From Octopus bimaculoides (lineage: Eukaryota), in assembly GCF_001194135.2 (NCBI RefSeq), contig NC_068983.1, positions 94,912,604-94,976,603 of the forward strand: a DNA stretch of 64,000 nucleotides, given 5' to 3'. The notes beneath the pieces were generated by a model, which had not been told where the DNA came from, did not search any database, and saw only the letters and a list, made by a program, of their open reading frames with translations. Below are positions 5,886-56,770 of the stretch, in pieces (position 1 is the first letter of the stretch; the number at the start of each line of letters is the position of its first letter). Position numbers and translations under genes: made by a program.

Positions 5886-5891
5886 TTTATT
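5886..5891 (-). terminator. Candidate poly(A) signal of TANGO6
   Basis: AATAAA on the minus strand about 300 nt after the current stop; another at 5751-5756. Confidence 0.4.
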
Positions 5892-6032
5892 TTTGCTAGA
5901 ATAAAAACAATAAAGTACAAGAACAAATTTTCTACTTTGACACTGAATCTTAAAAATACAAAATATGTTTCACAACAAAATATTACTTTAGATTTAAAGA
6001 CTCTGAAAACAAAAACAAAGATTTACTATGGG

Positions 6033-6201
6033 TCATCATCATCATCATCATCGTTTAACGTCCGCTTTCCATGCTAGCATGGGTTGGACGATTTGACTGA
6101 GGACTGGTGAAACCGGATGGCAACACCAAGCTCCAATCTAATTTGGCAGAGTTTCTACAGCTGGATGCCCTTCCTAACACCAACCACTCAGAGAGTGTAG
6201 T
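6033..6201 (-). mobile_element. 5'-truncated SINE with RTE-type (GAT)n tail, overlapping the TANGO6 stop codon
   Basis: Near-identical to 50850-51010 and 52690-52843 of this window; starts ACTACACTCTCTGAGTGGTTGG, ends GTTAAACGATGATGATG. Confidence 0.92.
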
Positions 6202-9200
6202 CCAATACACGAATTCTTTTGGTGAGAACTTGTTTTGGAAAAAGGGCATCTTTTACCAGATCATTGAGTTCATACAATGCCAAATTTGTTTGTAATTTAA
6301 CAGCTTCATCTTGTTCTTTGGATTTAATAGATTTCAATAATTTATATAAATCCTTTAAAATGTCTTCTAGAAGAACGAAAGTATCTTTTCCAAGTCCTTG
6401 TAACAACTGTGTAATCAAAAGAACTGCAGCAGCTCGCACCTCAGCACTGCTGTCATGTTTTGCCAAGCTGCTACAGCAAGAGAATATCTCATAAATAACA
6501 TTGCCTAATGAGAAGCGGAGAAGTTTACAAACCTCACCAAGATTAGATAGGCAGCTGGCACGCACCAAGAAATCACTGTCTTTTGTACCTTGTAAAAATG
6601 CATTGAGTAAAATGTTTTTAAATTTCACCACAGTTTCACCAAGTCCTTGTGTCACCTTTACAAGACATTCTCCAAGTTTGATTTTCAACTCAGATGAAAC
6701 AGCTTCAACATTGTGGATTTCTGATTCAGGATCCTGGAATAATTTAATTATCCTTGGTACCACTTTATTAGGAAAATGATCAGCCATAACAGATAGGCCT
6801 TTCACAGCAGAAAGATAGATGTAGGAATCTGGGTGGATTAGCTTTTCTTCAAAGATATGTAAAATAAGATCTTGCTTTTTGAGAGTCTCTTCATCTTTGT
6901 TTTGAATTAGTTGTGTCAATGCAATTAGTCCATGACCCTGAACAGGCACTAATGAATCATACGCATCTTTTAATGCTGACTGTAACTCAGACAAACGAGA
7001 ATCCTTCTCCTTGGGGAAATTGTACCTCATCTTGAAAGTGTTGGCTGTTGCAAATTTTGGTTGTAATGTATTGTTTTCAGGTGCACTATTTTTCAGGTTT
7101 GATCTGTTACTATCTTTGGTAGATATTTCATTAATGTTGGATACTATAGTATTGGAATCTGGCTGACACAAATGTTTCTCTTTATTTTCTCTCTCTAGAC
7201 TCTGATCTACTGACTTGTCAGCGGATAACAAAGTAACTTTGTTCCCCAAAGCAGTTTTGTTCCCACATGGTTCCTGTGAAGAATTTTCAATAACCTCTAT
7301 AAGTTTTTGATCTTTTTTAGAATCTGTAGTTTTTGTAGATTGTTCATTTTCTAATATAACAGCTGAGTCCATATCAGGCCAAACTGCTCCGTATGTGGCA
7401 ACAGCAATACGCAAGCTAGATGCCATTGTTTTAATGCTATGGTTATCTGTACTCGTAATCACATTCTGAAGAAGGGGAATAAATGTTCTCATACTATTTT
7501 GTTCCTCATTAGACATTTCCATGGCACTTGCCACAATAGCTGTCAGCAGGCCTAGGGATATAGTTAAAATTTCATTTGTGAAAATGCTTTCAAAGTCAAA
7601 CTCATTCTCATTAGCTTTACAGCAACATCTAGTTAGAGCAGCTTTGATGAATTCTAGTATATATTTAGTATTACTATTACTACTAAAGTTCTGTTTCTCA
7701 TAAATTGCTGCTATGAAGGTGAGAATTTTCAATTGATAAAATATTTCATCAGAATTACATGAAAAGCTCCGAGGATTTATATCTAAACTATTTTTATCTA
7801 AATTCTCTGGAAATTTGCTACATGAACTCACTTTTGAAGTTAATGTTTGAGTAAGGCTCTGAAGCATGTCTACAAATAAATTTTCTGATAATTTATTGGG
7901 TTTTATTTTATCAAGCAAATCCATTAGGTTATCAATCATATCTGAATCTTCTGAAAAGAAATCATACTGTCCCTTTTTCTTATCATCAAAAACAACACTA
8001 ACAGCACCATTACTCTCTACTATAAAATCTAAAGAAGCATGCATTAAAGGAATTTTGAATTGAGGGACTTTGTTTGTGGTGCTGAAAATAAAAGATTTCA
8101 AACACATAACTGCATTTTTCTCATCAAGAAATTTTAAATAAGTCAATAAAAGTTCTTCTGACAATTTTTTAACATTGATAGGTGCATCCTTCCAACAAAA
8201 TAAACAAAAAATAACATGGATAAATTGTTTCAAATTGGTTAGCAAATAAGAGTGTGGTTCACAACCAAGAACAAAGATTTTGTGACAGTTTTGCAGACAT
8301 TTGCTAAATTCACTTTCACTAATTAAAGATGCACCTTGTAAAGTTGTATCTTTATGTAAATACCCAGTGCAAGTATAAAAAGGACCAAAAATATACCGTA
8401 AACAGTATTCTTCAAAGATATCTGGCTGTTGCTTACAAACAATATTCATAGTACAACAAGCAATACGCAAGTATTGTTGTGACATCTCCATATCATTGCA
8501 TTTAAGTAATGCATTTACTTGAGGCAGTATTAAATTATAATAATTATCAACTTTTTCATTCAAAGGAATGTTAGCAATCACTTTTGAAATACCATCACGT
8601 ATTTTATTTTCATCAATTGGGTTTTTGGAATCTGAGATTGATGCATCAAGCATACCTTGAACAATATACAGCACTCCATTAGGTTTAAGAAGAATTTTTG
8701 TTAAATTCAAACTGCAAGCATTTTTTAGCCACTGAGGAGTCGGTGAAAAATTAGGAGGGGAAAATTTTATATCGGAATTTTCCTCATTCAGTTTTTTAAG
8801 AAGTTTTGGTGCTGGGACACCCTGCAAAAATACAAGTTCTCTTACCAAAGATGGTTGATAAGACCCATTGACCAGTTTTTCAAGAAACTTTTGACAAAAT
8901 GTGATGTCTTCGACAGTAACATGAACATGGCTTGTAACATTTTCCCGATTCGTCTCCATTGGATTACATGATCTAGAAGAACTTGGGTTGTTTGTAATTT
9001 CGGCTGTCGTTTTCGAAGGAAAAACATCACAGCAATTTATATTTCCAGACATCAAACTTTCAATTAAATAGTTAGAAGATAATTTTCTCAAATCGATATT
9101 GTTTTCCGTTTCAGTCGGAGAGGGCTTTTGTGGAGGATATTTTTTAACTCCATAGCACAACTGGAATATCACAGCAAGACAATCTCCTAAATGACGTGAC

Positions 9201-9793
9201 AAAAGTAGACTACCCAGCGACGTTCGGTTGAGACAAACTGAAAACAGGCGAGCAACTTGTAATAATCTAAACTGTCTTTCTAGTATTGATTTAGCCTCCG
9301 GCTTACAAGATAACAACAACGAACCATAATCGGATCTTTGCTGTAGCGGAATGCCAACACCTTTAGCAAAATAAGGATAAACTCCGAGATAAATGATGAA
9401 CTGCATAGTACTGCTGAACACTTTCTGTTGCATGATGCTCAGTATATCAGAAGGAGCAGCATCTTTGCTATTTAACTTTTCTACTCTATCATTTCGAGAG
9501 AGATCCTGAAGAATTATTAATAAAGCTTCGTTGAGAATAAGGCAGGTAGATGCAAATTTCCATTTTAGACTAGATTCAGAAGAGAAATAATGCGCTTGTC
9601 TCCTGGTATAGAATGAATTCAAACTTTGGAATTTGCCATCTTTACAGAGTTTGTCGCAAAAATCTTCAAAACTATTTTGAAGTAGGAAATCCAGCTCATC
9701 AAAATTTGATGACTCTTTATTCAAGCTCTCCCACTTGCCAGGAGAAACCAAAATTTCCATTGCTTCTATAGTTATCGTCAGTTGAGATTCCAT
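6188..9793 (-). CDS. TANGO6: Transport and Golgi organization protein 6 homolog (TANGO6/TMCO7/Rtp1 family), single-exon ORF, 1201 aa
   Basis: Uninterrupted 3606-nt ORF. Segments resemble TANGO6 as recalled: N-terminal PSDILSIMQQK..QFIIYLGVYPYFAKGVGIPL; C-terminal HEAT/ARM region DSLVPVQGHGLIAL, HPDSYIYLSAVKGL, DSDFLVRASCLSNLGEVC, EVRAAAVLLITQLLQGLG, LFPKQVLTKRIRVL. Confidence 0.93.
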   Translation of the reverse strand: MESQLTITIEAMEILVSPGKWESLNKESSNFDELDFLLQNSFEDFCDKLCKDGKFQSLNSFYTRRQAHYFSSESSLKWKFASTCLILNEALLIILQDLSRNDRVEKLNSKDAAPSDILSIMQQKVFSSTMQFIIYLGVYPYFAKGVGIPLQQRSDYGSLLLSCKPEAKSILERQFRLLQVARLFSVCLNRTSLGSLLLSRHLGDCLAVIFQLCYGVKKYPPQKPSPTETENNIDLRKLSSNYLIESLMSGNINCCDVFPSKTTAEITNNPSSSRSCNPMETNRENVTSHVHVTVEDITFCQKFLEKLVNGSYQPSLVRELVFLQGVPAPKLLKKLNEENSDIKFSPPNFSPTPQWLKNACSLNLTKILLKPNGVLYIVQGMLDASISDSKNPIDENKIRDGISKVIANIPLNEKVDNYYNLILPQVNALLKCNDMEMSQQYLRIACCTMNIVCKQQPDIFEEYCLRYIFGPFYTCTGYLHKDTTLQGASLISESEFSKCLQNCHKIFVLGCEPHSYLLTNLKQFIHVIFCLFCWKDAPINVKKLSEELLLTYLKFLDEKNAVMCLKSFIFSTTNKVPQFKIPLMHASLDFIVESNGAVSVVFDDKKKGQYDFFSEDSDMIDNLMDLLDKIKPNKLSENLFVDMLQSLTQTLTSKVSSCSKFPENLDKNSLDINPRSFSCNSDEIFYQLKILTFIAAIYEKQNFSSNSNTKYILEFIKAALTRCCCKANENEFDFESIFTNEILTISLGLLTAIVASAMEMSNEEQNSMRTFIPLLQNVITSTDNHSIKTMASSLRIAVATYGAVWPDMDSAVILENEQSTKTTDSKKDQKLIEVIENSSQEPCGNKTALGNKVTLLSADKSVDQSLERENKEKHLCQPDSNTIVSNINEISTKDSNRSNLKNSAPENNTLQPKFATANTFKMRYNFPKEKDSRLSELQSALKDAYDSLVPVQGHGLIALTQLIQNKDEETLKKQDLILHIFEEKLIHPDSYIYLSAVKGLSVMADHFPNKVVPRIIKLFQDPESEIHNVEAVSSELKIKLGECLVKVTQGLGETVVKFKNILLNAFLQGTKDSDFLVRASCLSNLGEVCKLLRFSLGNVIYEIFSCCSSLAKHDSSAEVRAAAVLLITQLLQGLGKDTFVLLEDILKDLYKLLKSIKSKEQDEAVKLQTNLALYELNDLVKDALFPKQVLTKRIRVLDYTL

Positions 9794-19976: not shown

Positions 19977-22900
19977 ACACACACATACACAATGGGCTTC
20001 ATACAATTTCTGTATATCAAATTCTCATCACAAGGCATTGTACGGCTTAGGGCTAGGGTTGCAATAGAAGATACTTGCCACTTGTGTCACACAGTGGAAC
20101 TGAACCTCAAGTTATATGGCTGAGAAAATCGCTCTCTTTCACACATACAGGCCTATCCTTTCACGTGACGGTACCACTTAAAAAGCACCCATGCTGGTGC
20201 TGCGTAAATGCACCCATGCCAGTGCTGCATTAATGCATCTATGCCAGCAGTATGTAAAAAGCACCCAGCATAATCTGTCTAGTTCTTGGCATTAGGAAGA
20301 GCATCCAGTCATAGAAACCATTCCACAACAGACTTTGAACTGATGCCAGTATGGAAAGCAGACATTAAACGATGATGATGATGAACCTAACTTCTGAACT
20401 ACACAACCATGCCTACACCTACATATATACATATGTGTGCATATATGTACATGTGAATGTGTGTGTATGCATGCACATGAGTGTATGTATGCCTGTGTAT
20501 GTGTTTATGCATATATGTATGAATGTGTGTGTGTGTATGTGTGTAAATGTTTGTTTTTTATGTTCTTTCTTTCTGTCTAATAATGAAGTTTTCCCCCTTA
20601 CAGGGATACACGAATGCAGACAACCCTTTTGGTGATGAGCATCTGCTAGACACTTTTGTATGGCAGAGGAAAATGGAGAAAGAAGGCAAGAAAGGTGTTG
20701 CAGTGGAGAAACTACAGAAGATGCAGAAGGAGAAAATGGCTGAGAATAGGGTCAGTAATATTAAAATATATGGTTTTTTTGTTGTTGAGTAGTCTTGTTT
20801 TGCTTTACTTGAGTATATTAGTGACAACCCATGAGTACCAGAATAAGCAATTGAGACCAATCCAAAGGACTAAACTTCATACTGTCATGCAGTGATTGAT
20901 TATTGTTGTTTTAACTCCAGGTTAACTCTGATTAAGCAGACCTGTGATCAAAGGCCGTTTTGCATGTTATGAGGGTCTGCCTAAGATTATATTATCTAAT
21001 TCATTTTTTCCTTATTTATGACCATAGGACGTAAACTAAAGAAGTAGTTATGGAAGCTCCCTCATAAGCATGCAGTGGTTTCTTATGCAATTTGGCAGTT
21101 TAGATATGTTTTTCTTTTTTGTGTTTATTCTTTGTTATCAAAGGCTCCAACGATGATTGCATCAAATCAGAAGAATTTTGCTTTTAATTTTATCAAAACT
21201 TAGTAAAATTAACATGTTTAATGTTCCTCTTGACTAATTGTATGATGACAGCTGTTAGAAAAATATATGCAAGGACAGAAATCCTGAGGGCTAATGTTTT
21301 GGGAAAGAAGTACCAGAATTGTTGGTCAATGTGAGGAATAGGGTCATGAAGATGATATGGGTGACAACTTAGTGAGAGATGAGTAAGTTGAGAGTGCTTG
21401 AGTAGAAGTGACACAAGAGCAACTAGTTCCAATTGATAGAAGTTACTGTAGTAGTTGTTGAAAAGACAGAGAAGGGAGATGGTACGTCTTTGGGTCAGAT
21501 TGGAATATACAAGAATTTTAACTTGCAGGGCTGTATTAAATGGGAACCTATATCAGAGTTTGGGCATAATGAAGTAATATTATAGTTGTTTTGTATATAA
21601 ATTATGCTAGGTGGCGAGCTGGCAGAAACGTTAGCACATCGGTCGAAATGCTTAGCTGTACTTTGTTTGTCTTTATGTCCTGAGTTCAAATTCCACCAAG
21701 GTTGACTTTGCCTTTCATCCTTTCAGGGTTAGTAAATTAAGTACCAGTTGTGTACTGGGGTTGATCTAATTGACTGGCCCCCTCCCCAAAAGTTTCAGGC
21801 CTTGTGCCTTGAGTAGAAAAAAAGTATATAAATTATGCTGTTTGTTTGGAACCAATCAAAGAATTAGAAGATTTAAAGTGAGATATTTGGGGGTAGGGTT
21901 GTCACAAGTGGTTTTTCATTTTTACAAGTTTTATTTAACTGTGTAGATGATCTTTGAATGTGTAAAAGCTTTTTTATGATTTTCAGAGCTTGTAATTTAT
22001 GTTAGTGGTAAAGAGCAGTAAATATCCACAAAGTTGGCTTAATCTGTGGTATATTATATTGTTGATAGGTATCATCATCATCATCATCATTTAATGTCCA
22101 TTGTCTATGCTAGCATGGGTTGGATGGTTTGACCGGGCTGGCACGCTGGAAGGCTGCACCAGACTCCAGTCTGATTTGGCAGTTTCCATTTATTACCCAA
22201 ATGCTGTGCTTGTAAGTACTCGCAGTGCTGCATGTTGAAAATGGTCCATCAGATTTTTGCTTTATTGAATAAGATGTGAAGTATCAGATAAGGTGATCTG
22301 GCACTCCTGAGGAGTATTTCAGGACATATGTAAGAAGGTTAAAAGTAATTTGAGCGCTTTGAAATTGAAAGTACAAATAAGTGTCCACTAAATTCTCTGT
22401 CTCAATTCCTCATCAATCAATGTAGATCTTGATGTCTTCACAAGGAAGTTCAGGTCTAAATACTGATAGGAACTTGCATTTATGCATGTTACTTTGATAG
22501 TTTATATCTAAAACAGTGTTGTACATTTTATGTATTTTCTGTATTTACATGGAATTTTCTACTGATTTTCTTCATATTGCAGCGGGAACTTGAGAAAGTA
22601 AAGAAACGACGTCTTGAGCGAGAAAAGGAACAAGAAGAGAGGGAGAAGGAAAGGGTATCTATGTATAGCTTGTTTCTTTCTTGTACATATTAACAGGGCA
22701 CAGTGGTTGATTAGTTGAGTACTAAGATAGTTGTTAAAAGTTTTAAAGCTACTGATTTTTCTTGTGAGTGAAGTTCATTTTTTATATATATATATATATA
22801 TATNNNNNNNNNNNNNNNNNNNNNNNNNNNNNNNNNNNNNNNNNNNNNNNNNNNNNNNNNNNNNNNNNNNNNNNNNNNNNNNNNNNNNNNNNNNNNNNNN

Positions 22901-24163
22901 NNNNNNNNNNNNNNNNNNNNNNNNNNNNNNNNNNNNNNNNNNNNNNNNNNNNNNNNNNNNNNNNNNNNNNNNNNNNNNNNNNNNNNNNNNNNNNNNNNNN
23001 NNNNNNNNNNNNNNNNNNNNNNNNNNNNNNNNNNNNNNNNNNNNNNNNNNNNNNNNNNNNNNNNNNNNNNNNNNNNNNNNNNNNNNNNNNNNNNNNNNNN
23101 NNNNNNNNNNNNNNNNNNNNNNNNNNNNNNNNNNNNNNNNNNNNNNNNNNNNNNNNNNNNNNNNNNNNNNNNNNNNNNNNNNNNNNNNNNNNNNNNNNNN
23201 NNNNNNNNNNNNNNNNNNNNNNNNNNNNNNNNNNNNNNNNNNNNNNNNNNNNNNNNNNNNNNNNNNNNNNNNNNNNNNNNNNNNNNNNNNNNNNNNNNNN
23301 NNNNNNNNNNNNNNNNNNNNNNNNNNNNNNNNNNNNNNNNNNNNNNNNNNNNATTTAATTTAATTTTGTTAACGTATATAGTTATTTAATTCCATTTGTT
23401 TATCTGTGTATTGTATTATATTGTATTATATTTTGTTCATATTGTTATCAGTTTATGGGGATTTTATTCTGTCATATGTTGTGGTGTGTTGGGGGTGTGT
23501 GCTAGTATTCCATTCCAGTTTCCTATTCAGGCTAGGTTTATCTTCTATTATGTGTGTAGCTTCTGTAATTTGTCTAAGCGTTGCGTCTGTTCTATGTGTG
23601 GACAAGATTTTAACTTCTATGTTGTTGAGTGAGCCTCCGTGTTCCTGCTCAGCATGCTGGTACAGAACTGATGAGCTCTTCTCTTCCTTAAGTTCCCTCC
23701 AATGTTCATTTACCCGATCTCCTATGCTCTGTGCCGTTTCCCATACATACGTCGTTGTCTTGTTACTGCATCGTCCTTCTGTACATCTTATACTATAGAC
23801 TACATTTCTGGCTCTACAGTTTGTTTGCAGGCTAAATCTACATACAGTACAGTTCCTATCAGTACAGGGGGTTCTACTAAAAGGGTAGGTTCTACTGATA
23901 AGGGATTTGATAGGGTTGCCTGGCCTTTCAACAACCTTAATTCTTAGCTTAAGTTTGTCTAGGGCCCTTCTAAAGCAGTATGCCAGTTCGCCTCTAGGAG
24001 TGGTGTCGACGAACATGACACTCTGGTATTTGTGGCTATCATACCATGAGTTGGCCTTCCCTATTTTCTTGTCAGTACTCACAGTGCTATATTACTCAGG
24101 GAGAAAATAGGGAAGGCCAACTCATGGTTGGCGATTTTTTTTTTTCTGTGGGGATACCTGAAA

Positions 24164-27656: not shown

Positions 27657-28226
27657 CATATATATACATATATATATATATCTGTATCTATCTATATGCG
27701 AAATTTTATGCTTTGGGGCAGATTTTGTCAAATTGATGTCACGATGGCTAGTGTGCAAAATGGGGAATTAAAACAACGAATTGAAATAATAAGTTTTAGC
27801 AAATCAAAACAATTCACATTGAAATGAAGAATTAGCAAATGTTAAATAGATTGCTGTTAATAAGCTGTCTGTTTATACCCATGAAACATTTTTCGTCAAA
27901 TTGATGTCACAATGGCTAGTGTGAAAAATCCCGAAATTTTATGATTCTTGAAAAATCGATGCTGATAAAAAATCGATTTTTGAAAAAAAATTCCAAAGGC
28001 ATAAGCCCTACACATGTGTGAAGTTTCATCAAGGTCTGTTGGATAGTCTTGAAGTAGTTAAAGTAACAAATTCACAAACACACAAACTTGCCATTTATTA
28101 TGATTTTTACTTTGTATTATATTATACTTATTTATTGTGCATTTACTTATTAATTTTTCTATATGTGACTGTGGGTTTTTATGAATGAGTTCATGAACTT
28201 TGGTTCTTTTCTCTAAAACAAAATAT

Positions 28227-29155: not shown

Positions 29156-30058
29156 GTGTGTGTGTGTGTATGTATGTATAGGTGTGTGTGTGTGTATTTC
29201 TCAAATTGCTGGACCAAGTCATGAAAGTTACAGAAAGAGTTATAGCCCAATTAATTAGAAAGAATTATTGTAGATGAGATGCAGTTTGATTTTGTGCTAA
29301 GTAAAAGTATTACTCATACTCCCTTTCTAGTAAGACAACTCCAGGATAAATGTTTAGCTAATTGCAAGCCATTGAAGTTGGCATTCAGCAAACTGGAGAA
29401 AGCCTTGTTCTGTTATGTGGTGGTCTCTGAGAAAGCTAGATCTCTGGACAAATGGCTTGTGGGAACTATGCAGGCCATGTACAGGGACACTGCCTGTAAG
29501 GTGTGTGTTAGTAATGAGGACAGTAATAAATTTAGTCTTCAAGGTAGGAGTACGCCAGGCTTGGTTCACAGGGAGGACCAGAGGTACTATTTAGCACAAT
29601 TCCCTCTTGCAAGCATTTGGAACAATGACTTGCATTAAAGGACTCCTTGAGACAATGAGATAATGTTAAATCAAGCGGTACGTTAAGGTAGCATGACTGA
29701 TCTATTAGTTTCAGTTCTGGAGTAACCTTTCTTCTTAGTGCTGAAATTTAAAGAGAATCTGAATGCTAATATATTCATCATCATCATCACTTAGCATCTC
29801 TTTTTTCCATATTGGCCCAGGCTGAATGATTTGACATGAACAGATTAGCCAGAGGGCTGCAGCAAGTTCTCATGTCTGCTTGAGTACTGGGTGCTTTTTG
29901 CATGGCACCAGCAAGCACTGGGGAGGTCATCAAGTACTCACAGGCCATGACCCCCTCATCTGAGTGAGGTATAGTATTGAGGGATAAGAATGTAAGATTG
30001 AAGGATAGGAGCAGATGTCTTACTGAAGTGGTAAATACATGGTTTTTGCCCACCTGGT

Positions 30059-49040: not shown

Positions 49041-52000
49041 TTCTACTAAAGGCACAAGGCCTGAAATTTGTGGGGAGTGGACTAGTCAATTACATTGACC
49101 CCAGTTTTCACTGGTACTTAATTTATTGATCCCAAAAGGACAAAAGGCAAAGAACCATCCAGTGGTTCTTGAGATATCTTGTCCACAGACAAACAAACAA
49201 ACATGACTGAAAACAATACCTCTGCCTTCACTAAGATGGAGGTAATAATGATTTCAAATTTTGGCACAAGCCCAGCAATTTCGGGTGAGTGGGAAGTCAA
49301 TTACATTGACCCCAGTGTTCAACTGGTACCTATTGTATCAACCCTGAAAGGATGAAAGGCAAAGTCAACTTTGGTGGAATTTGAACTCAGAACCTGAAGA
49401 CAGATGAAATGCTGCCAAGCATTTTGTCTGGCATGCTAATGATTCTGTCAGCTCATTCTTTCTACTATAGACTGAAGACCTGAAATTTTGGGGGAGGAGG
49501 AGTCAAATTGACCCCAGTGCTCAACTGGTACTTATTTCGTCATTCTGAAAAGGATGAAAGGCCAAGTCAACCTCAGTAGATTTTGAACTCAGAACGTAAA
49601 GACAGACGAAATGCTGCTAAGCATCTTGGCCAGCATGCTACCAATTTTACATTGGTAGCATGCTGGACATTCCACTCTGAGTCACCAAATCATCTCATCT
49701 TCTCCACTATCTTATGTCTCCTCATACACTACACCAGCCTCTCATACTCTCACAACCTACTCAACTACTTGTCATCTCTTTCTCTCTCACATAAATATCC
49801 TTCCCCTATTTATTATATTATCATTACTGTTCTGCTGTTCTTCACCACCATGTGTTATTGGTCATCCCATCAATTTATCCATTGTTCACTACAAACACCT
49901 CTCAATACCTGTTTTTCAGTCATATTCACCCCTTTACCCATTCCCCATTTTTCACTCTCCCAATCTCTAATCACCCACATTCCCAGTTTTACCTCTATTC
50001 ATTTCTGCTCACCTCATATCTTAGGTGGGGGAGGGTCCACCTTGATCACCTCCACCCACCCTCTAATCTAAAGGGTGAGTTGCTATATAACACTTCTACA
50101 GCAAGAACCCTGTTCTGGTTTGGCCCCTTCCTCTCTTACTTTAAACCTCATCACCTTGCATAAAGCTGCAGTTCTCAAATTTACAAGATCACCTCAGTAC
50201 AGCAGGAAATTTATTCTATAATGAGATTACAATCACATCATGACAATACTCTAAAATGAGGTATTTGGGACACATTGATGTATGAAGTGTTATTTGATGT
50301 ATGAAGTGTTATTTGATATATGAAGTGAGTAAGAAGGTTAACAGTTACGGAGCAGTGATATATCAATCACCAGTGTTTTAATGCAAACAATTATTGAAAG
50401 AAAAAAATTTGGGTCTCTTTTCAGATATTCTATCCTGACCTTATAAATAAAGCTGATACTCCAGAATATGCTTTGGTAAGTTTTTCCCACATTTATTTCT
50501 GCAAAACTCTTCTGAGACATTATATTTCAAAAAATAAATTAATTTACTAATTAATATTGGACTTTCACACTCCTAAACTATATGACAAGCATGGATTGTT
50601 GTTCCTTTTCCGAGACAGACATAGTTACAACTACAGATGGAACAAATAAAAATTTACTAAACCTTCTCTGAAAAGCAGTCTTGGAAACTGATTTCTATGC
50701 CGAGTTTAACCTTTAGCACATTGCATTTTTTTCTAGAATTACCGACGTTGCCTTCTTGTGCAGGTGGCACGTAAAAAACACCATTTTGAGCGTGGCTGTT
50801 GCCAGTACCGCCTGACTGGCCTTCGTGCCAGTGGCACGTAAAAGCACCCACTACACTCTCAGAGTGGTTGGCGTTAGGAAGGGCATCCAGCTGAAGAAAC
50901 TCTGCCAAATCAGATTGGAGCCTGGTGTAGCCATCTGGTTCACCAGTCCTCAGTCAAATCGTCCAACCCATGCTAGCATGGAAAGCGGATGTTAAACGAT
51001 GATGATAATGATAATGTTTCCCCTGTCACTGCCCTGTTGTTACAGGGGAGAAAACTCATACAGTGACATGATGCACCTACAGTGTGCTAAAGGTTAATGT
51101 AATTTGTTTTATATATGAAAAGACATAGTTTATGATTAATATATTGGAAGTATGATCATAAACATCATTGAAACATAATGCAGTTATATTGTATGCAATG
51201 ATGAATGACAATGAAACGTGGAGCAGTGTTATTACATTGGTATTACACATGTGATGTATGACAGTGACCCTTCATAATGTGTCATAAGTATGGTGGTATA
51301 TTCTCTGTTTTATCATTATCATTTTAATATTCACTTTTCTATGCTTGCCTGGGTCAGATGGAGTTTATTGAAATAGACTCTCTGTGGCTGGATGTCCTTC
51401 CTATCACCAGCCCTTACCTGTTTCTGATCAAGGTAATATCTCCCCATGGCCAGACATGTTTACACAGAATATTGGAAATCACTCAACATCAGAATAAGAA
51501 GACGCAGACACACAAACACACACAAATCCACTTACGAGGCTTTAGTTGGCCGAAAGTGCCACACTGGGACTGAACCCAAAAATCATATTGTTGGGAAGCA
51601 AAAACCTTACTCACACAGCTATGCCCAATGCTCCATAAATGGGTTGATGGCTGATGCATCATAAATGTTGTGATGTGTGTCTGACATGTGAGGTAGTAAT
51701 ATAGTAAAATGTACCAACATAGAGCAATCATACAGTATGATGCATGCAAGTAAAACAATTGTATCTGGCTATATTTGTTTTATAACTGGGTGATGTTTGA
51801 GGTGGGGTTGTGAATGGATCCGAGTGAGAGATAGACTAATTAAGAATTTTGAGAAGTTAATTGACATAGATTATTAAAATATTTCATGAGAAAAACCTTT
51901 ATATCTAATCTAGTATTTCCTAACCTTTTCGTTCTTGGGGAAACCTTGAAATACAATTCCATATCTCTGGAAAACTGTATAAAAAAAAATTATTATATAT

Positions 52001-53635
52001 CGTTATTAACTTTGCTTGACTGACAAATTTGGTTCTCTTTCTATTTCATAGTTGATTATTTAAAAGTAAGGTCATCCAGGCTGCAAAATCAGTTCCCCTA
52101 ACAGAATGATTCCTATGTATGCTAGCATGGTATAAATAGCTGCACAATGTATCTCATTTTGAAAACATTTGTTTCATTCCTTCTGAAAATTGATTTTTAC
52201 TTCAGTGATATAATTGTCTCCTCTCTCTTTACAGACACCTTGCAATGACAATAAAGATTTTGCACTGTTACGCTTTCATGCTGGGCCACCCTATGAGGTA
52301 AATATTGTTTTATATCCATTTCGAGACTGTTGTTCTTGAAGTAGAGATGTTTTTGGGAGTATTATTTTACCTTACTGATTTTAAAAATTGGTAGACTGAA
52401 GTGGAGTTTAAGAATATTACTAAAAAGCTAGTTACTAGTGTGTGTATCCTACTTTTTTAGATATATTTTTCATATTTTCCATATCTCAACATCTATCCTT
52501 AATGGTAATTGTGCTTTCAGCTGTTTGGCAATTAATCTCAATAAAGCTAGCCCTTCTATTAGGATTACTTATTGAATGGCAAAGAGAGAGTGTAGGTGTT
52601 TGTGAAAAGATAGTCTATTTTTTTATGTTGAGTAGGGAATACTTTTTTGTAGTAGTTCAATGTTTACAGGGTCCTAACATTCCATTCTGGTTAAACACCA
52701 ATAAGGAAGGGCACCCAGCTGTAGAAACTCTGCCACATCAGATTGGAGCCTGGTGCAGCCATCTGGTTCGCCAGTCCTCAGTCAAATCGTCCAACCCATG
52801 CTAGCATGGAAAAAAGGACGTTAAACGATGATGATGATGATGAAGCTGTCCAAAATATCAAGGATCAGTTATTTGCAAGCATTCACCAGGACCATTGACT
52901 GTTGAAGAGAGGGTGTAACTATTTGCAATGGAAGCAATACAACTATTTTGTCATTCCCCATATATCTGCATTATAAACTGCTTATTTTGAACAAATGTAT
53001 TGATAGAGTTTGTTACTCCACAAGATGGCATGTGAGCCATAAAGGCTGCATCAGAATTTCTTTTGGACTAAATTCTGATGATCTATTGATAGAAAAGGTG
53101 CATTCCCATCAGGGATACATAAAATGCTCTCTCTCTCTTTCTCATCAAAATCGTCAGCGCATTAGGCTTATCAGTGACTAGTTGGATAGCTGGTTTCCTA
53201 ATGTTCAAGTTGCAGATGATATATTAATGTTCATCACAGTACTCCCTGTACCTCTTGTACCATAGTTGTGCTCCCCATGAATACCAGTCTGCTATTGATA
53301 AACACAATAAGAAATAAATTTATCTGAGATGTTTTAGATACTCATTCCTACAAATTTAAATTATAAGGTTGTGTTGTCCAAAACCACAAGAAATAGGTTT
53401 CTACTCTCTTGGCCCTAAAAAATAAAACCAGAAATGGAAATAAAAAAAAAACTTTTTAATGAATATGTACTTGAATATTGTAATAACTGTGTGAATTCTC
53501 CTTTTGCAGGATATTGCATTCAAAATTGTCAACCGTGAATGGGAATATTCATACAAGCGAGGCTTCCGCTGTCAGTTCCAGAACAACATTTTCCAACTGT
53601 GGTTTCACTTCAAACGTTATCGCTACCGGCGATAG
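10231..53635 (+). CDS. CACTIN: Cactin (spliceosomal C-complex factor), 19 coding exons, 709 aa (whole-gene span)
   Basis: Exons join in phase via GT-AG introns to 2130 nt. Conserved Cactin motifs [79 protein letters not shown], and C-terminus [14 protein letters not shown]. Confidence 0.97.
12050..12960 (-). mobile_element. CR1/Jockey-group LINE fragment
   Basis: QVR....(W)[10 protein letters not shown] motif near 12200-12270 on the minus strand; heavily decayed. Confidence 0.4.
13040..14100 (-). mobile_element. RTE-clade LINE fragment (RT core)
   Basis: Decayed GSVLSPLLF / LLYADDLVLIAES region at about 13890-13990; RTE-type 3' region toward 13100. Confidence 0.65.
14275..14478 (+). CDS. 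CACTIN: Cactin exon 2
   Basis: Acceptor TTTGCAG; [28 protein letters not shown]...[14 protein letters not shown](R); donor GTAGGT; phase 2 in and out. Confidence 0.88.
15529..15598 (+). CDS. CACTIN: Cactin exon 3
   Basis: TTTTCAG; [23 protein letters not shown]; donor GTAATA. Confidence 0.93.
15724..16942 (-). mobile_element. Degenerate Tc1/mariner-superfamily element with DUF4817-type HTH
   Basis: TIRs TACAGGGTGTCCCCAAAA / TGCAAAATGTCCCCAAAA; ORF remnant [25 protein letters not shown] resembles the N-terminus of DUF4817 transposases. Confidence 0.7.
17777..17830 (+). CDS. CACTIN: Cactin exon 4
   Basis: TTTCAG; [18 protein letters not shown]; donor GTAAAC. Confidence 0.93.
18530..19436 (-). 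mobile_element. Internally deleted Tc1-like (DUF4817) element with about 55-bp TIRs
   Basis: TIR TACAGGATGCAGCAAAATGATCTGACATATTTGTAGGTTTAATAAAAGTGAAAT matches the other end; [26 protein letters not shown] joined to [22 protein letters not shown]. Confidence 0.85.
19739..21174 (+). repeat. Identical 70-bp direct repeat flanking Cactin exon 5 (19739-19808 and 21105-21174)
   Basis: TATGTTTTTCTTTTTTGTGTTTATTCTTTGTTATCAAAGGCTCCAACGATGATTGCATCAAATCAGAAGA present twice without mismatch. Confidence 0.92.
20604..20750 (+). CDS. CACTIN: Cactin exon 5
   Basis: CTTACAG; [28 protein letters not shown]...KMAENR; donor GTCAGT. Confidence 0.95.
21610..21820 (+). mobile_element. tRNA-derived SINE, family A (GGCGAGCTGGCAGAAACGTTAGC head)
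   Basis: B box GAGTTCAAATTCC, tail GGCCTTGTGCCT.GAGTAGAAA. Other copies at about 2312-2521(-), 10416-10616(-), 31899-32010(+), 40209-40345(+), 44210-44330(-), 63474-63566(-). May correspond to described octopus OK/OR SINEs; not verified. Confidence 0.85.
22583..22654 (+). CDS. CACTIN: Cactin exon 6
   Basis: ATTGCAG; [24 protein letters not shown]; donor GTATCT. Confidence 0.93.
22804..23352. other. Assembly gap (549 N)
   Basis: Run of N between a (TA)n tract and the 3' side of the Penelope-like fragment. Confidence 1.
23453..24128 (-). mobile_element. Penelope-like retroelement, 5'-truncated: Cys-rich linker + GIY-YIG endonuclease
   Basis: 209-aa ORF: [21 protein letters not shown], CxxxxCxx[11 protein letters not shown]...YVWET(AQS)..[33 protein letters not shown]. 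Flanked by (TA)n plus gap and by (TG)n. Confidence 0.85.
24376..24438 (+). CDS. CACTIN: Cactin exon 7
   Basis: Acceptor TTTTATAAAAG (AAG); [21 protein letters not shown]; donor GTAAGT. Confidence 0.92.
24761..25207 (+). repeat. Diverged about 160-bp direct duplication (24761-24921 and 25048-25207)
   Basis: Both start CATGTGTATAAATATAAACAAACTAA, share TTAGAACAGCAGAAATACTGGGTAAATTAC and end AAAAATTTGTCA. Confidence 0.85.
26303..26360. repeat. (CA)n microsatellite (representative)
   Basis: Pure CA run. Other microsatellites: (CA)n about 17895-17930, 28913-28938; (TA)n about 18486-18512, 19930-19975, 27620-27680, 28228-28258, 28445-28475; (GA)n about 30065-30092; (TG)n about 24163-24190; (AAT)n about 49005-49040. 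Confidence 0.95.
27690..28100 (+). mobile_element. Possible non-autonomous Helitron/HINE-like element
   Basis: 3' part GTGAAGTTTCATCAAGG...ACAAACACACAAACTTGCCATTTATTA resembles HINE/Lep1-type ends as recalled; internal about 35-bp direct repeat at about 27726 and 27896; preceded by a long (TA)n. Confidence 0.35.
29042..29096 (+). CDS. CACTIN: Cactin exon 8
   Basis: TTTTTCAG; [18 protein letters not shown]; donor GTAAGC; phase 1. Confidence 0.94.
29270..29580 (+). mobile_element. RTE-clade LINE fragment (RT N-terminal motifs)
   Basis: [23 protein letters not shown]...[20 protein letters not shown], a decayed QFGF..STTDAIF.VRQLQEK..AFVDLEKA..EWLV.AVQAMY. Confidence 0.75.
30262..30350 (+). CDS. 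CACTIN: Cactin exon 9
   Basis: CATACAG; (A)[29 protein letters not shown]; donor GTAAGT. Confidence 0.95.
33009..33162 (+). CDS. CACTIN: Cactin exon 10
   Basis: GTTTCAG; [33 protein letters not shown]...LDPLSR; donor GTGAGA; phase 1. Confidence 0.95.
33600..34430 (-). mobile_element. RTE-clade LINE fragment
   Basis: Same decayed RT C-terminal sequence as the 1190-1560 and 59060-59500 fragments, followed by a (GAT)n tail near 33515. Confidence 0.5.
35506..35652 (+). CDS. CACTIN: Cactin exon 11
   Basis: ATTACAG; (D)[25 protein letters not shown]...QGGEGIDI; donor GTAAAT; phase 1. Confidence 0.95.
35762..36181. repeat. 60-bp-unit minisatellite, about 7 copies, in Cactin intron 11
   Basis: Unit GTCCTGTTATCCTCTACTATCATTCTCTTTCCTGTTGCTATCATTATTATCACTTCTCTT; consecutive 60-nt lines nearly identical; 10-N gap inside (35873-35882). 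Confidence 0.95.
37137..37246 (+). CDS. CACTIN: Cactin exon 12
   Basis: GCTACAG; (G)[36 protein letters not shown]; donor GTAATT. Confidence 0.95.
40585..40790 (+). CDS. CACTIN: Cactin exon 13
   Basis: ATTACAG; [12 protein letters not shown] followed by S/T-rich low-complexity linker; donor GTAAGT; phase 2. Confidence 0.92.
41080..41560 (-). mobile_element. Mariner transposase C-terminal remnant
   Basis: [25 protein letters not shown], a decayed HDNAPAH / SPDLAPxDFFLFPKL. Confidence 0.55.
42452..42641 (+). CDS. CACTIN: Cactin exon 14
   Basis: TGTTTAG; [10 protein letters not shown]...[11 protein letters not shown]...[14 protein letters not shown]; donor GTAAGT. Confidence 0.92.
44925..45305 (-). 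mobile_element. tRNA-derived SINE, family C (CORE-like CCTTGGGCAAGTGTCTTCTACTATAGC body, internal (TG)n), near full length
   Basis: Head GGC(A/G)TGGCT.TGT.GTAAG; 3' end GACTGAAACAAGTAAAAG. Partial copies at about 2925-3110(-), 17390-17640(+), 20000-20135(-), 26558-26760(+), 32815-32940(-), 39130-39270(+), 39830-39990(-), 46555-46705(-), 51540-51625(-). Confidence 0.8.
45425..45580 (+). CDS. CACTIN: Cactin exon 15
   Basis: CTTTCAG; [26 protein letters not shown]...[15 protein letters not shown]; donor GTAAGT. Confidence 0.95.
45994..46316 (-). mobile_element. tRNA-headed non-autonomous retroelement with hammerhead ribozyme and inverted terminal copy
   Basis: Minus strand: tRNA-like head 46227-46158 (A box TGGCATAGTGG, B box AGTTCGATTCC), (AAT)n, body, hammerhead 46087-46042, tail; 68-nt inverted copy of the tail at 46232-46299. 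Confidence 0.8.
46042..46087 (-). ncRNA. Minimal type-I hammerhead ribozyme motif
   Basis: GACAC-CUGAUGA-A-GGCUG(GAGAGUAUAU)CAGCC-GAA-A-UG-U-U-GUGUU: stem I GACAC/GUGUU, intact core, 5-bp stem II, 1-bp stem III as in Penelope-associated hammerheads. Confidence 0.8.
47459..47542 (+). CDS. CACTIN: Cactin exon 16
   Basis: ATTTCAG; [28 protein letters not shown]; donor GTAAGT. Confidence 0.97.
49039..49640 (-). mobile_element. Three tandem family-A SINE copies after an (AAT)n tract
   Basis: Copies at about 49039-49145, 49255-49455 and 49460-49640, same orientation. Confidence 0.8.
50425..50475 (+). CDS. CACTIN: Cactin exon 17
   Basis: TTTTCAG; [17 protein letters not shown]; donor GTAAGT. Confidence 0.95.
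50737..51016 (+). mobile_element. SINE with RTE-type (GAT)n tail (longest young copy of this family)
   Basis: GGCACGTAAAAGCACCCACTACACTCTC...CCATGCTAGCATGGAAAGCGG.TTAAACGATGATG. Other copies at about 17985-18170(-), 20190-20385(+), 22071-22180(-), 27040-27452(+, two), 31475-31720(-), 34720-34962(+), 39010-39107(+), 52686-52843(+), 58556-58740(-). Confidence 0.85.
52235..52297 (+). CDS. CACTIN: Cactin exon 18
   Basis: TTTACAG; [21 protein letters not shown]; donor GTAAAT. Confidence 0.96.
53510..53635 (+). CDS. CACTIN: Cactin exon 19 (terminal coding part)
   Basis: TTTGCAG; [41 protein letters not shown], stop TAG 53633-53635. Confidence 0.97.
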   Translation, partial: DIAFKIVNREWEYSYKRGFRCQFQNNIFQLWFHFKRYRYRR

Positions 53636-55817: not shown

Positions 55818-56770
55818 TTAACGGCAAATAAGATTTACATCTTTTAATTGTTGATAAATAATTTTCATATTTCTTGGCATCACATGATGTCCACTTATTA
55901 TGTTTTTGTAAGTACAGCCAGTGTGTTGTTGGTTATGGATTGTAAACTTGCTACTGTCTATTCTTGTTGCATTCACTCGGTTTGCAAGCATCCCTGTTAT
56001 ATAAACATCTTCAAGCCAGAAGCGCTTTCCATTAAATGATTCTGCATACAATTCTGGTACTAAGTCACCTGAAATTAGATAAGCAGTCCCAGAGACATAC
56101 TCAGGAAACTCATTCTTTGGATATTTTGATATGGGTGTGTACCATTTTGATGAACTATCTCTGATTGGTGCAACATGTTTAAAAAGTAAACCCATGATAA
56201 ACCGAGAACGTTTCATGTTCATAAGTGTTTTCTCTAACAATGGAAGATTTATATACATATCATCATCTGTTTTCAACACAAATTTTACTTTTCTACATGA
56301 AGAACTCACCCAACGTAGATAAGCAATTGACTTTAAAGATAAGTTTGCATAATGATCAATATAGTTCTCTTGTACAATATCACCATATTTTACACTTTCT
56401 TCATGAATATCATCTTGAACACCAGGACCATGTGTAACACCTTCAAAAAAAACCATCTTAAAGTTTGAATTATTCCTAGCATATTGACCCCACGTCTCTC
56501 GTATGGTATTTCGACGCAGTATATTTATTGGGGCTGAACACACAGCAACAAGGATCTGAACAGAGTCAGAACAATTATTTGTCAAATGAATGTATGAGAA
56601 ATGATATGACTGTTGGTTTATGATAGAAACATCTGAAAATGGAAGAAATCGTAACCACCTGCCTGAAAGTATATTCATGTAGGTTTCTGGATTGATTTGG
56701 TACATGAGAATAATGTACACAAAAATGGCTATAATTAATATTGTCATCCATATGCGAATCTTCTTTTTAC
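55818..56770 (-). CDS. Beta-1,3-galactosyltransferase (CAZy GT31 / Galactosyl_T family, B3GALT1/5-like), main exon
   Basis: N-terminal TM segment; GT31 motifs RRNTIRETWG, DIVQENYIDHYANLSLKS, KTDDDMYINL (DxD), FPEYVSGTAYLIS, EDVYITG. Acceptor CATTTCCAG ends at 56771; frame stays open upstream of the ORF-track Met (KKKIRIW). Confidence 0.92.

What the first reader, a model, noticed from the sequence alone, without database searches (positions are those of the whole stretch)
6026..6202. A SINE inserted at the penultimate codon of TANGO6 and now supplies its C-terminus and stop codon
Seen: the ORF ends VLD-YTL*. From 6201 downward the sequence (ACTACACTCTCTGAGTGGTTGG...) matches the SINE copy at 50850-51010, so Y-T-L-TGA is SINE-derived. 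Directly after the SINE's (GAT)n tail the minus strand reads GAC CCA TAG (6034-6026). Removing the 168-nt insert restores ...KRIRVLDP*, with GAC duplicated at both junctions. Vertebrate TANGO6 as recalled ends in a similar ..KKIMVLP*. Inference: a young retroposon changed the C-terminus (P to YTL) of a conserved gene and donated most of the proximal 3' UTR, a potential lineage marker or polymorphism.
Basis: seen in the sequence. Interest (0 to 1): 0.75.

Follow-up and report, generated by a model that had tools for sequence, protein, structure and literature searches.

The report
SINE insertion rewrote octopus TANGO6 C-terminus
In the California two-spot octopus, a short mobile element landed one codon before the end of the conserved gene TANGO6, so the protein now ends in Tyr-Thr-Leu instead of Pro; this is a real, species-lineage-specific event, but an ordinary and probably harmless kind.

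Summary
The window is Octopus bimaculoides chromosome CM046603.1. A single-exon 1201-aa TANGO6 ORF (6188-9793, minus strand) ends ...KRIRVLD-YTL-TGA.

Window 6035-6201 is a 5'-truncated, sense-oriented copy of an abundant octopod SINE with a (GAT)6 tail. It is 93% identical to 50850-51016 (E about 1e-68). Immediately after it come GAC CCA TAG.

The orthologous DNA of O. vulgaris, O. sinensis, an unidentified octopod (SRR11869394) and Argonauta hians has an uninterrupted empty site, TTA GAC CCA TAG/TAA. Cutting 168 nt from the window restores a 1199-aa ORF ending VLDP*, the length of the O. vulgaris and O. sinensis ORFs. dS values place the insertion on the O. bimaculoides branch after its split from O. 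vulgaris/sinensis.

Three qualifications:
- **Stop codon:** the T of the TGA is not shared by the only other young copy (AGA), so the stop may be a later mutation. The next in-frame stop is also in the SINE (TAG, 6155-6157).
- **Target duplication:** it is only 0-3 nt.
- **Effect:** the TANGO6 tail after the conserved ...KKIxVL motif varies naturally (0-8 residues), so the change is probably neutral.

Transcript use and fixation could not be tested. This is a new member of a known kind, of modest interest.

The parts
6188..9793 (-). TANGO6 coding sequence, a single exon of 1201 codons plus the TGA stop
   Evidence: ORF list. Pfam hits TANGO6_N, ARM_TANGO6 and RTP1_C1 at E 1e-28 to 1e-46. The translation is identical to the NCBI O. 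bimaculoides protein. dN/dS about 0.3 against O. vulgaris.
6200..6202 (-). GAC (Asp1198), upstream copy of the possibly duplicated target. The last 2 nt (AC) also match the SINE, giving junction microhomology.
   Evidence: BLAST segments overlap by 3 nt in every relative.
6035..6199 (-). 165-nt SINE insert, sense orientation, 5'-truncated. It lacks at least 20 nt of the basic unit and about 95 nt of the long form.
   Evidence: 93.5% identity to 50850-51016. Absent from four relatives. Aligned with long copies.
6191..6199 (-). SINE-derived codons TAC ACT CTC (Tyr-Thr-Leu) that replace the ancestral terminal Pro
6188..6190 (-). Current stop codon TGA, inside the SINE. Its T (6190) is unique among the copies seen: the sister copy has AGA, O. 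sinensis copies GGA, older copies AAA.
   Evidence: Alignment A3.
6155..6157 (-). Next in-frame stop, TAG, also in the SINE. It would end the ORF as ...[17 protein letters not shown] if codon 1202 were AGA.
6035..6052 (-). (GAT)6 simple-repeat tail of the SINE
   Evidence: The same tail is present on other copies.
6032..6034 (-). GAC, downstream copy of the duplicated target (or GA of the tail plus C of the target)
6026..6031 (-). Ancestral last codon CCA (Pro) and ancestral stop TAG, now in the 3' UTR
   Evidence: They align base for base with the terminal CCA TAG/TAA of O. vulgaris, O. sinensis and the SRR11869394 octopod.
5886..5891 (-). First AATAAA downstream of the stop, a candidate polyadenylation signal. 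Its use is inferred only.
   Evidence: Motif scan.
50756..51016 (+). Long copy of the same SINE subfamily, used as reference. It has a duplicated head module, the body and a GAT-rich tail.
52704..52841 (+). A third young, 5'-truncated copy of the same subfamily
   Evidence: 92.8% identity and three-way alignment.

Best explanation
In the lineage leading to Octopus bimaculoides, after its split from the O. vulgaris/O. sinensis lineage, an RNA copy of an abundant octopod SINE with a (GAT)n tail was reverse-transcribed into the TANGO6 exon. It entered between the Asp codon (GAC) and the last codon (CCA, Pro).

The mechanism is most likely target-primed reverse transcription by a LINE with a microsatellite tail. 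The copy is 5'-truncated and was joined with 0-3 nt of target duplication or microhomology.

TANGO6 is intronless here and the element sits in the sense orientation inside the only exon. Translation therefore runs from Asp1198 into the SINE, reads Tyr-Thr-Leu and stops at a TGA inside the SINE. The remaining 153 nt of the SINE, the old CCA TAG and the old 3' UTR now form the 3' UTR.

The conserved C-terminal motif FPxQxLxKRIxVL is untouched. The residues after it vary naturally across animals, so the change is most likely selectively neutral or nearly so.

**Shown:** the insert, its family, the empty orthologous sites, the branch on which it occurred, the intact ORF under purifying selection, and the variability of the tail.

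**Inferred:** the TPRT mechanism and LINE partner, presence of the SINE in the mature mRNA, fixation in the species, and neutrality.
For: - **Insert and family.** 93.5% identity over 168 nt to a second copy, E about 1e-68. There are 14 family hits in the 64-kb window, plus copies in O. sinensis.
- **Empty sites.** In four taxa the flanks join exactly at a single GAC.
- **ORF lengths.** The genomic ORFs of O. vulgaris and O. sinensis are 1199 aa ending VLDP*. Excising 168 nt from the window gives the same.
- **Polarity.** dS is 0.076 for Obim-Ovul, 0.185 for Obim-SRR and 0.177 for Ovul-SRR, with Argonauta at about 0.78. Two successive outgroups are therefore empty.
- **Orthology.** Cactin is the divergent neighbour in all four genome assemblies.
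- **Gene is functional.** dN/dS is about 0.3 over 1199 codons, with all TANGO6 Pfam domains present.
- **Age.** The copy has 4 private substitutions in 141 nt plus one indel. Flank divergence to O. vulgaris is about 11%.
- **Target duplications.** Other copies of the family also lack long target duplications.
- **Tail variability.** In 148 TANGO6 representatives the motif ...KKIxVL is followed by P, DPE, DPP, DAES, GYQ, DSPPEPF and others. In the 58 where it could be located by pattern, the tail length is mostly 0-8 residues.
- **Tagging tolerance.** Human TANGO6 carrying a C-terminal FLAG tag gave a staining pattern compatible with endogenous TANGO6 (PMC10943085).
- **Context.** SINE fragments are commonly embedded in octopus transcripts, and the octopus RTE LINE has a microsatellite tail (PMC9115989).
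Against: - No transcript, read-level or population data for O. bimaculoides could be reached. mRNA inclusion, assembly correctness and fixation therefore rest on inference.
- All database copies of the YTL protein come from the same assembly.
- The SINE head was not recognised as a tRNA or any Rfam family. 'SINE' rests on copy number, size, tail and presence/absence behaviour.
- The T of the TGA is unique among the copies seen, so the present stop may be secondary.
- Neutrality is argued from comparative variability only.
Confidence: 0.88

Rival explanations
1. The SINE first added a longer tail ([14 protein letters not shown], stop at TAG 6155-6157). A later A-to-T change (AGA to TGA at 6190) cut it back to YTL, possibly because a short tail is favoured.
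For: The only other young copy that covers this site has AGA. Two O. sinensis copies have GGA and three older copies have AAA, so T is seen only in the TANGO6 copy. The copy has several other private changes. Natural TANGO6 tails after the VL motif are short, mostly 0-8 residues.
Against: There is only one comparator from the same subfamily. The T could have been present in the particular source copy. A 15-residue tail is not shown to be harmful. Attempts to obtain more O. bimaculoides copies failed.
Confidence: 0.35
2. The new C-terminus or the SINE-derived 3' UTR has been co-opted, for example for altered TANGO6 interaction or localisation, mRNA stability, or as an RNA-editing substrate. In that case the insertion is adaptive, not neutral.
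For: The insertion persists in an essential gene under purifying selection. SINE fragments are enriched in brain-expressed octopus transcripts (PMC9115989).
Against: Only three residues are added, after a motif whose downstream tail varies freely across animals. No conservation test is possible for a single-lineage insert. The insert shows ordinary decay, with 4 private substitutions and 1 indel. There is no inverted partner copy within the transcript to form an editing substrate; the nearest other copies are more than 10 kb away.
Confidence: 0.07
3. The insert is an assembly artefact, or a rare allele of the sequenced individual, and not a feature of the species.
For: All sources of the YTL protein trace to one assembly (GCA_001194135). 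No independent O. bimaculoides contig with this protein was found.
Against: Both junctions are clean and the flanks resume exactly, with a 3-nt overlap typical of retroposition and not of a chimeric join. The copy has its own private substitutions and an indel, so it is not a pasted duplicate of another locus. Reported heterozygosity of O. bimaculoides is very low at 0.08% (PMC9795677).
Confidence: 0.05
4. The SINE was ancestral at this site and was precisely lost in the other octopods.
For: None beyond the formal possibility.
Against: This would need at least three independent excisions, each exact to the base and each leaving a single GAC, including in two successive outgroups. SINEs have no precise-excision mechanism (established knowledge). 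The copy's divergence is lower than expected for a pre-Argonauta insertion (against dS 0.78).
Confidence: 0.01

Closest known systems
Transposable-element-derived coding sequence and C-terminal replacement by SINE insertion into a terminal coding exon (for example Alu, B1 or B2 fragments in mammalian CDS and 3' ends; from general knowledge such as Nekrutenko & Li 2001)
   Same: A retroposon lies inside the annotated CDS in sense orientation. It supplies the last codons, the stop codon and the proximal 3' UTR, and it is lineage-specific with empty orthologous sites.
   Different: This is a direct insertion into the only coding exon, one codon from the end, and not exonisation of an intronic element by new splice sites. 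Only three residues change. The host is a cephalopod, and the element has a (GAT)n tail instead of poly(A).
Octopus SINEs OK, OR1 and OR2 (Ohshima & Okada 1994; cited in PMC4758252 and PMC4824008) and the abundant, mostly unclassified octopus SINEs (PMC13282606)
   Same: A short, highly repeated octopod retroposon with a simple-repeat tail. SINEs make up 11.6% of the O. vulgaris genome, with an expansion dated to about 18 Myr ago.
   Different: No reference sequence of OK, OR1 or OR2 or any Repbase family was available, so identity with a named family was not tested. ARAGORN and Rfam do not recognise a tRNA-like head. Long copies carry 2-4 tandem copies of a head module of about 65 nt.
SINE presence/absence loci used as phylogenetic markers (retroposon systematics; PMC9223172)
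   Same: A filled site in one lineage and exact empty sites in the sister group and outgroups, a character expected to be free of homoplasy.
   Different: So far the filled state is known from a single genome. Its distribution among close relatives such as O. bimaculatus is unknown.

Membership tests
TANGO6 / Rtp1 (host gene) | Domain set TANGO6_N, ARM_TANGO6 and RTP1_C1 (with or without RTP1_C2), each above the Pfam gathering score | tested here: met
   151.8, 157.3 and 99.9 bits against cut-offs of 27, 27 and 25.9. RTP1_C2 scores 19.2 bits, just below its cut-off of 21.1.
TANGO6 / Rtp1 (host gene) | Orthology with annotated TANGO6 of other animals, and conserved gene neighbourhood among octopods | tested here: met
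   hits named TANGO6 in O. vulgaris, Argonauta, fish and horseshoe crab. Cactin is the neighbour in four assemblies.
SINE (LINE-dependent short retroposon) | Short (about 100-500 nt), interspersed, many diverged copies | tested here: met
   14 hits in 64 kb at 71-93% identity, plus copies in O. sinensis.
SINE (LINE-dependent short retroposon) | Head derived from a Pol III gene (tRNA, 5S or 7SL) with internal promoter | tested here: inconclusive
   ARAGORN and Rfam (E up to 1) find nothing in the long copy at 50600-51100. Diverged SINE heads often escape these tools. The TANGO6 copy lacks the head in any case.
SINE (LINE-dependent short retroposon) | 3' simple-repeat or A-rich tail; copies anchored at the 3' end with variable 5' truncation | tested here: met
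   (GAT)n tails on nearly all copies. 5' ends vary while 3' ends coincide.
SINE (LINE-dependent short retroposon) | Target-site duplication flanking the insert | tested here: inconclusive
   Only 0-3 nt (GAC) at the TANGO6 copy, and no clear duplication at other copies. This is compatible with LINE clades that make short or no duplications, but it is not diagnostic.
SINE (LINE-dependent short retroposon) | Orthologous empty site in related species | tested here: met
   (four taxa).
SINE (LINE-dependent short retroposon) | Partner LINE sharing the 3' end | not tested
   No LINE with this 3' end was looked for. The octopus RTE is reported to carry a microsatellite tail (PMC9115989), which is a lead only.
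CORE-SINE superfamily / octopus OR1, OR2, OK | Sequence match to the roughly 60-nt CORE domain or to the published OK/OR consensus | not testable with these tools
   No reference sequences are held. The papers found only name the families.
TE-derived coding sequence in an expressed gene | TE nucleotides lie inside the annotated CDS of an intact, constrained gene | tested here: met
   Codons 1199-1201 and the stop lie in the insert. The NCBI protein ends YTL. dN/dS is 0.3.
TE-derived coding sequence in an expressed gene | Transcript evidence that the TE part is in the mature mRNA | not testable with these tools
   No O. bimaculoides transcript data were reachable. Inclusion is inferred from the single-exon structure, and the first AATAAA lies about 300 nt downstream.

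The most novel reading that the evidence does not exclude
The SINE did not bring a ready-made stop. It first extended TANGO6 by 14 SINE-encoded residues ([14 protein letters not shown]). A subsequent AGA-to-TGA mutation inside the element then trimmed the tail back to three residues. That would be a two-step 'damage and repair' history, suggesting selection for a short TANGO6 C-terminal tail.
Probability: 0.3. Interest if true: 0.4.

Novelty: new member of a known kind. Interest (0 to 1): 0.3.

Why it matters
- **Worked example.** It is a clean, base-resolved case of a retroposon rewriting the end of an essential, deeply conserved gene (an RNA polymerase II assembly and import factor) in a cephalopod, a group whose genomes are shaped by SINE and LINE expansions.
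- **Marker.** It provides a simple 168-bp presence/absence marker for the O. bimaculoides lineage.
- **Annotation.** It explains why the O. bimaculoides TANGO6 protein ends differently from its relatives. It also exposes annotation errors in O. sinensis and O. vulgaris that seem to arise around this stop codon.
- **Limits.** It does not reveal a new mechanism and probably has no phenotypic effect.

Tried and rejected
1. **Protein search with a SINE-frame peptide**. The aim was to find more young copies and settle whether TGA is the subfamily consensus. No candidates were found.
2. **B3GALT paralogue route**. The window's galactosyltransferase was used to reach O. bimaculoides paralogues and hence more O. 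bimaculoides DNA. Only one paralogue (P0016) was named and it is not on record, so this was a dead end.
3. **ARAGORN and Rfam on the long SINE copy**. No tRNA or RNA family was found, so the head's origin is unresolved.
4. **Species identity of two assemblies**. A literature look-up for SRR11869394 and ERZ21867824 found nothing. They are treated as an unidentified octopod, placed by dS, and an unidentified more distant relative.
5. **Literature.** The Albertin 2015 paper is not held. No paper holds both TANGO6 and octopus.
6. **O. sinensis as an apparent refutation**. The RefSeq protein ending VLDYTH... was rejected as counter-evidence. Its genome has the empty site. The YTHGV residues come from a mini-exon in another SINE copy about 18 kb downstream, joined through non-canonical junctions.
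7. **Ancestral insertion with precise loss.** Considered and rejected by parsimony.
8. **Long target duplications.** Looked for at other copies to calibrate the 3-nt GAC. None were evident.
Full report
**Observation**

The minus strand of the window carries one uninterrupted ORF, 6188..9793, of 1201 codons. Pfam identifies it as TANGO6: TANGO6_N, ARM_TANGO6 and RTP1_C1 all score far above their cut-offs.

Its last codons are GAC 6202-6200, TAC 6199-6197, ACT 6196-6194, CTC 6193-6191 and TGA 6190-6188. From 6201 downward the sequence aligns with 50850-51016 on the plus strand at 93.5% identity over 168 nt, E about 1e-68. It ends in (GAT)6 at 6052-6035. Directly after come GAC 6034-6032, CCA 6031-6029 and TAG 6028-6026.

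Every coordinate in the finding is therefore correct, and the similarity is far beyond chance.

**Source and host gene**

An exact look-up places the protein on Octopus bimaculoides chromosome record CM046603.1 of GCA_001194135.2. The same 1201-aa protein ending YTL is the one held by NCBI and UniRef.

**The decisive test: empty sites**

I fetched the orthologous DNA from four other octopods:

- O. vulgaris (L001)
- O. sinensis (L005)
- an unidentified octopod assembled from SRA run SRR11869394 (L002)
- Argonauta hians (L003)

In the genome assemblies the gene has the same divergently oriented Cactin neighbour, so these are orthologous loci.

BLAST of window 6400-5300 (minus strand) against them gives two segments each time. 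One segment ends at window 6200 and one starts at window 6034. In O. vulgaris, O. sinensis and SRR11869394 the two segments are contiguous and overlap by exactly 3 nt, the GAC. For Argonauta only the upstream segment reached BLAST significance, and its empty site is shown by the MAFFT alignment.

That alignment shows ...GTATTA GAC CCA TAG/TAA in O. vulgaris and SRR11869394, and ...GTTTTA GAC CCA CCA TAA in Argonauta. None has any trace of the insert.

Read straight from the genome, the O. vulgaris and O. sinensis ORFs are 1199 aa ending KRIRVLDP*. SRR11869394 ends KRIRVLDP* and Argonauta ends KRIHVLDPP*. Deleting 168 nt from the window (165 nt of insert plus one GAC) yields a 1199-aa ORF ending KRIRVLDP*.

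**Polarity and age**

Nei-Gojobori distances on the genomic ORFs:

| Pair | dS |
|---|---|
| O. bimaculoides - O. vulgaris | 0.076 |
| O. bimaculoides - SRR11869394 | 0.185 |
| O. vulgaris - SRR11869394 | 0.177 |
| any Octopus species or SRR11869394 - Argonauta | about 0.78 |

SRR11869394 and Argonauta are therefore successive outgroups, and both are empty. The insertion happened on the O. bimaculoides branch.

One paper cites 13-33 Myr for the O. bimaculoides/O. vulgaris split and reports a SINE/LINE burst at about 18 Myr (PMC13282606).

Against the two other young copies in the window, the TANGO6 copy has 4 private substitutions in 141 comparable positions plus a 1-nt insertion. The downstream flank differs from O. 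vulgaris by about 11%. The copy is thus compatible with any time on that branch. 'Young' is relative.

**The element**

The family is abundant. There are 14 BLAST hits in the 64-kb window, most at 71-82% identity and three at about 93%, with further copies in O. sinensis.

Copies share their 3' ends and a (GAT)n tail, and they differ in 5' extent. Older copies are about 185 nt long and begin near GGTGCCACGTAAAAGCACCC. Long copies carry 2-4 tandem head modules of about 65 nt.

The TANGO6 copy starts at ACTACACTC, so it is 5'-truncated and lacks the head. ARAGORN and Rfam do not recognise the head as a tRNA or any other RNA family. I could not compare it with the named octopus SINEs OK, OR1 and OR2, which the papers only mention.

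Calling it a SINE therefore rests on size, copy number, tail, 3'-anchored truncation and presence/absence behaviour.

**Junctions**

The SINE homology begins with AC, overlapping the last two bases of the upstream GAC. The tail repeat GAT shares GA with the downstream GAC. The real target duplication is therefore between 0 and 3 nt. Other copies in the window show no obvious longer duplications either.

This fits target-primed reverse transcription with a very short stagger and microhomology at the 5' join. That pattern is seen for LINE clades with microsatellite tails, and the active octopus RTE element is reported to have such a tail (PMC9115989). The mechanism and the partner LINE are inferences.

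**The stop codon**

The stop lies in SINE-derived DNA, but its first base, T at 6190, is not shared by any other copy I could align. The sister copy at 50850 reads AGA, the two O. sinensis copies read GGA, and three older copies read AAA.

With AGA the ORF would run 11 more codons to a TAG at 6157-6155, also inside the SINE, giving ...[17 protein letters not shown]. All three sense frames of the insert contain stops, so the element would have terminated TANGO6 in any case.

Whether the present TGA came with the element or arose later is open. My two attempts to obtain more O. bimaculoides copies failed.

**Consequence for the protein**

The gene is intact and constrained, with dN/dS about 0.3 against O. 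vulgaris over 1199 codons.

A HMMER scan of 1.8 billion representatives with the last 200 residues returned 762 relatives. I inspected the C-termini of 148 of the best 150. A motif of the form FPxQxLxKKIxVL is conserved from vertebrates to molluscs and lies at the very end of the protein.

What follows the VL is short and free to vary: P in many vertebrate-like sequences, then DPE, DPP, DAES, HPDS, GYQ, DPINNFNM, DSPPEPF and others. In the 58 sequences where a simple pattern located the motif, the tail is mostly 0-8 residues long.

The octopus insertion fell one codon after VLD, leaving the motif intact. D-YTL is within the natural range.

Human TANGO6 carrying a C-terminal FLAG tag gave a staining pattern compatible with the endogenous protein (PMC10943085). 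I therefore consider the amino-acid change most likely neutral. This is an inference.

**Consequence for the mRNA**

The CDS is a single exon and the insert is in the sense orientation without an AATAAA. The first AATAAA downstream is at 5891-5886. Any full-length transcript should therefore contain the SINE, which then supplies the first 153 nt of the 3' UTR, followed by the old CCA TAG and the old UTR.

No transcript data for O. bimaculoides were reachable, so this is also inferred. SINE fragments embedded in octopus transcripts are common (PMC9115989).

**An apparent counter-example**

The O. sinensis RefSeq protein XP_029633628.2 ends ...KRIRVLDYTHGVDIPIPPK.... At first sight this looks like a relative ending in 'YT' without the insert.

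Its gene model spans 23 kb, while the genome has the empty site GAC CCA TAG. The residues YTHGV come from TACACTCACGGAGTG inside a different SINE copy about 18 kb downstream. It is joined through a GAC|CC 'donor' and a non-AG 'acceptor'. This is a model artefact.

The O. vulgaris model P0003 likewise skips an internal segment and splices across the stop, using TA|GTAAAT.

**Rivals**

- **Assembly artefact or private allele.** This cannot be excluded without reads but is unlikely. The junctions are clean, the flanks overlap by 3 nt, and the copy has its own private mutations.
- **Ancestral insertion with precise loss.** This would need several base-exact excisions and is rejected.
- **Adaptive co-option.** There is no positive evidence for it.

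**Comparison with the known, and verdict**

TE insertions that supply C-terminal codons, stops and UTR sequence are a well-known kind. No paper in the library links TANGO6 and octopus, so this case appears undescribed.

It is a new member of a known kind. It is neat, well supported, useful as a lineage marker and as an annotation correction, and probably without functional consequence. Interest 0.3.

Noticed in passing
window 6188-9793 (-); L001, L002, L003, L005, L006: The whole TANGO6 coding sequence (about 3.5-3.65 kb) is a single uninterrupted ORF in O. bimaculoides, O. vulgaris, O. sinensis, the SRR11869394 octopod and Argonauta hians. The same holds on a 163-kb genomic contig of a more distant relative (ENA ERZ21867824, 48% aa identity). 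From general knowledge, vertebrate TANGO6 is multi-exonic. This suggests an old intron loss or retrogene replacement in the cephalopod lineage.
   Followed up: partly
L005 9592-9600, about 27980-27994 and 29277-29354 (O. sinensis): RefSeq model XP_029633628.2 (P0010) ends VLDYTHGVDIPIPPK... by joining the TANGO6 exon, through non-canonical junctions, to a 15-nt mini-exon inside another SINE copy 18 kb downstream and then to a further exon. The genome itself reads GAC CCA TAG. This is probably an annotation artefact, possibly guided by the O. bimaculoides YTL protein.
   Followed up: yes
L001 about 6592-6837 (O. vulgaris); window 6021-6028 and 5895-5900 (-): The O. vulgaris gene model P0003 drops an internal segment of the ORF. 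It also splices across the stop codon (donor TA|GTAAAT, acceptor ...tctag|C) to add 33 residues. The same donor and acceptor sequences exist in the window, where such an intron would lie in the 3' UTR. The donor GT is absent in SRR11869394 and Argonauta, so the intron is doubtful.
   Followed up: partly
window 50756-50850; L005 25800-26060 and 27750-27975: Long copies of the SINE carry 2 (O. bimaculoides) to 4 (O. sinensis) tandem copies of a head module of about 65 nt containing GGTGGCACGTAAAAAGCACC. The two O. sinensis copies also share a further common 5' leader. The full structure and origin of the element are unresolved.
   Followed up: partly
window 50706-50723 and 51080-51097: An 18-nt inverted repeat (94% complementary) brackets the reference SINE copy. 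The SINE may have inserted into a small TIR/MITE-like element.
   Followed up: no
window 55818-56747 (-): An intact single-exon beta-1,3-galactosyltransferase gene (309 aa, Pfam Galactosyl_T, E 4e-47). Its O. sinensis orthologue is 91% identical. An O. bimaculoides paralogue (P0016) at 85% identity is not in the window.
   Followed up: partly
window 22804-23352 and 35873-35882: Runs of N (549 and 10 nt), which are assembly gaps. ORFs listed across them are meaningless.
   Followed up: no
window 23453-24082 (-): A 209-aa ORF with no Pfam match. It lies next to the assembly gap and may be a fragment of a mobile element.
   Followed up: no
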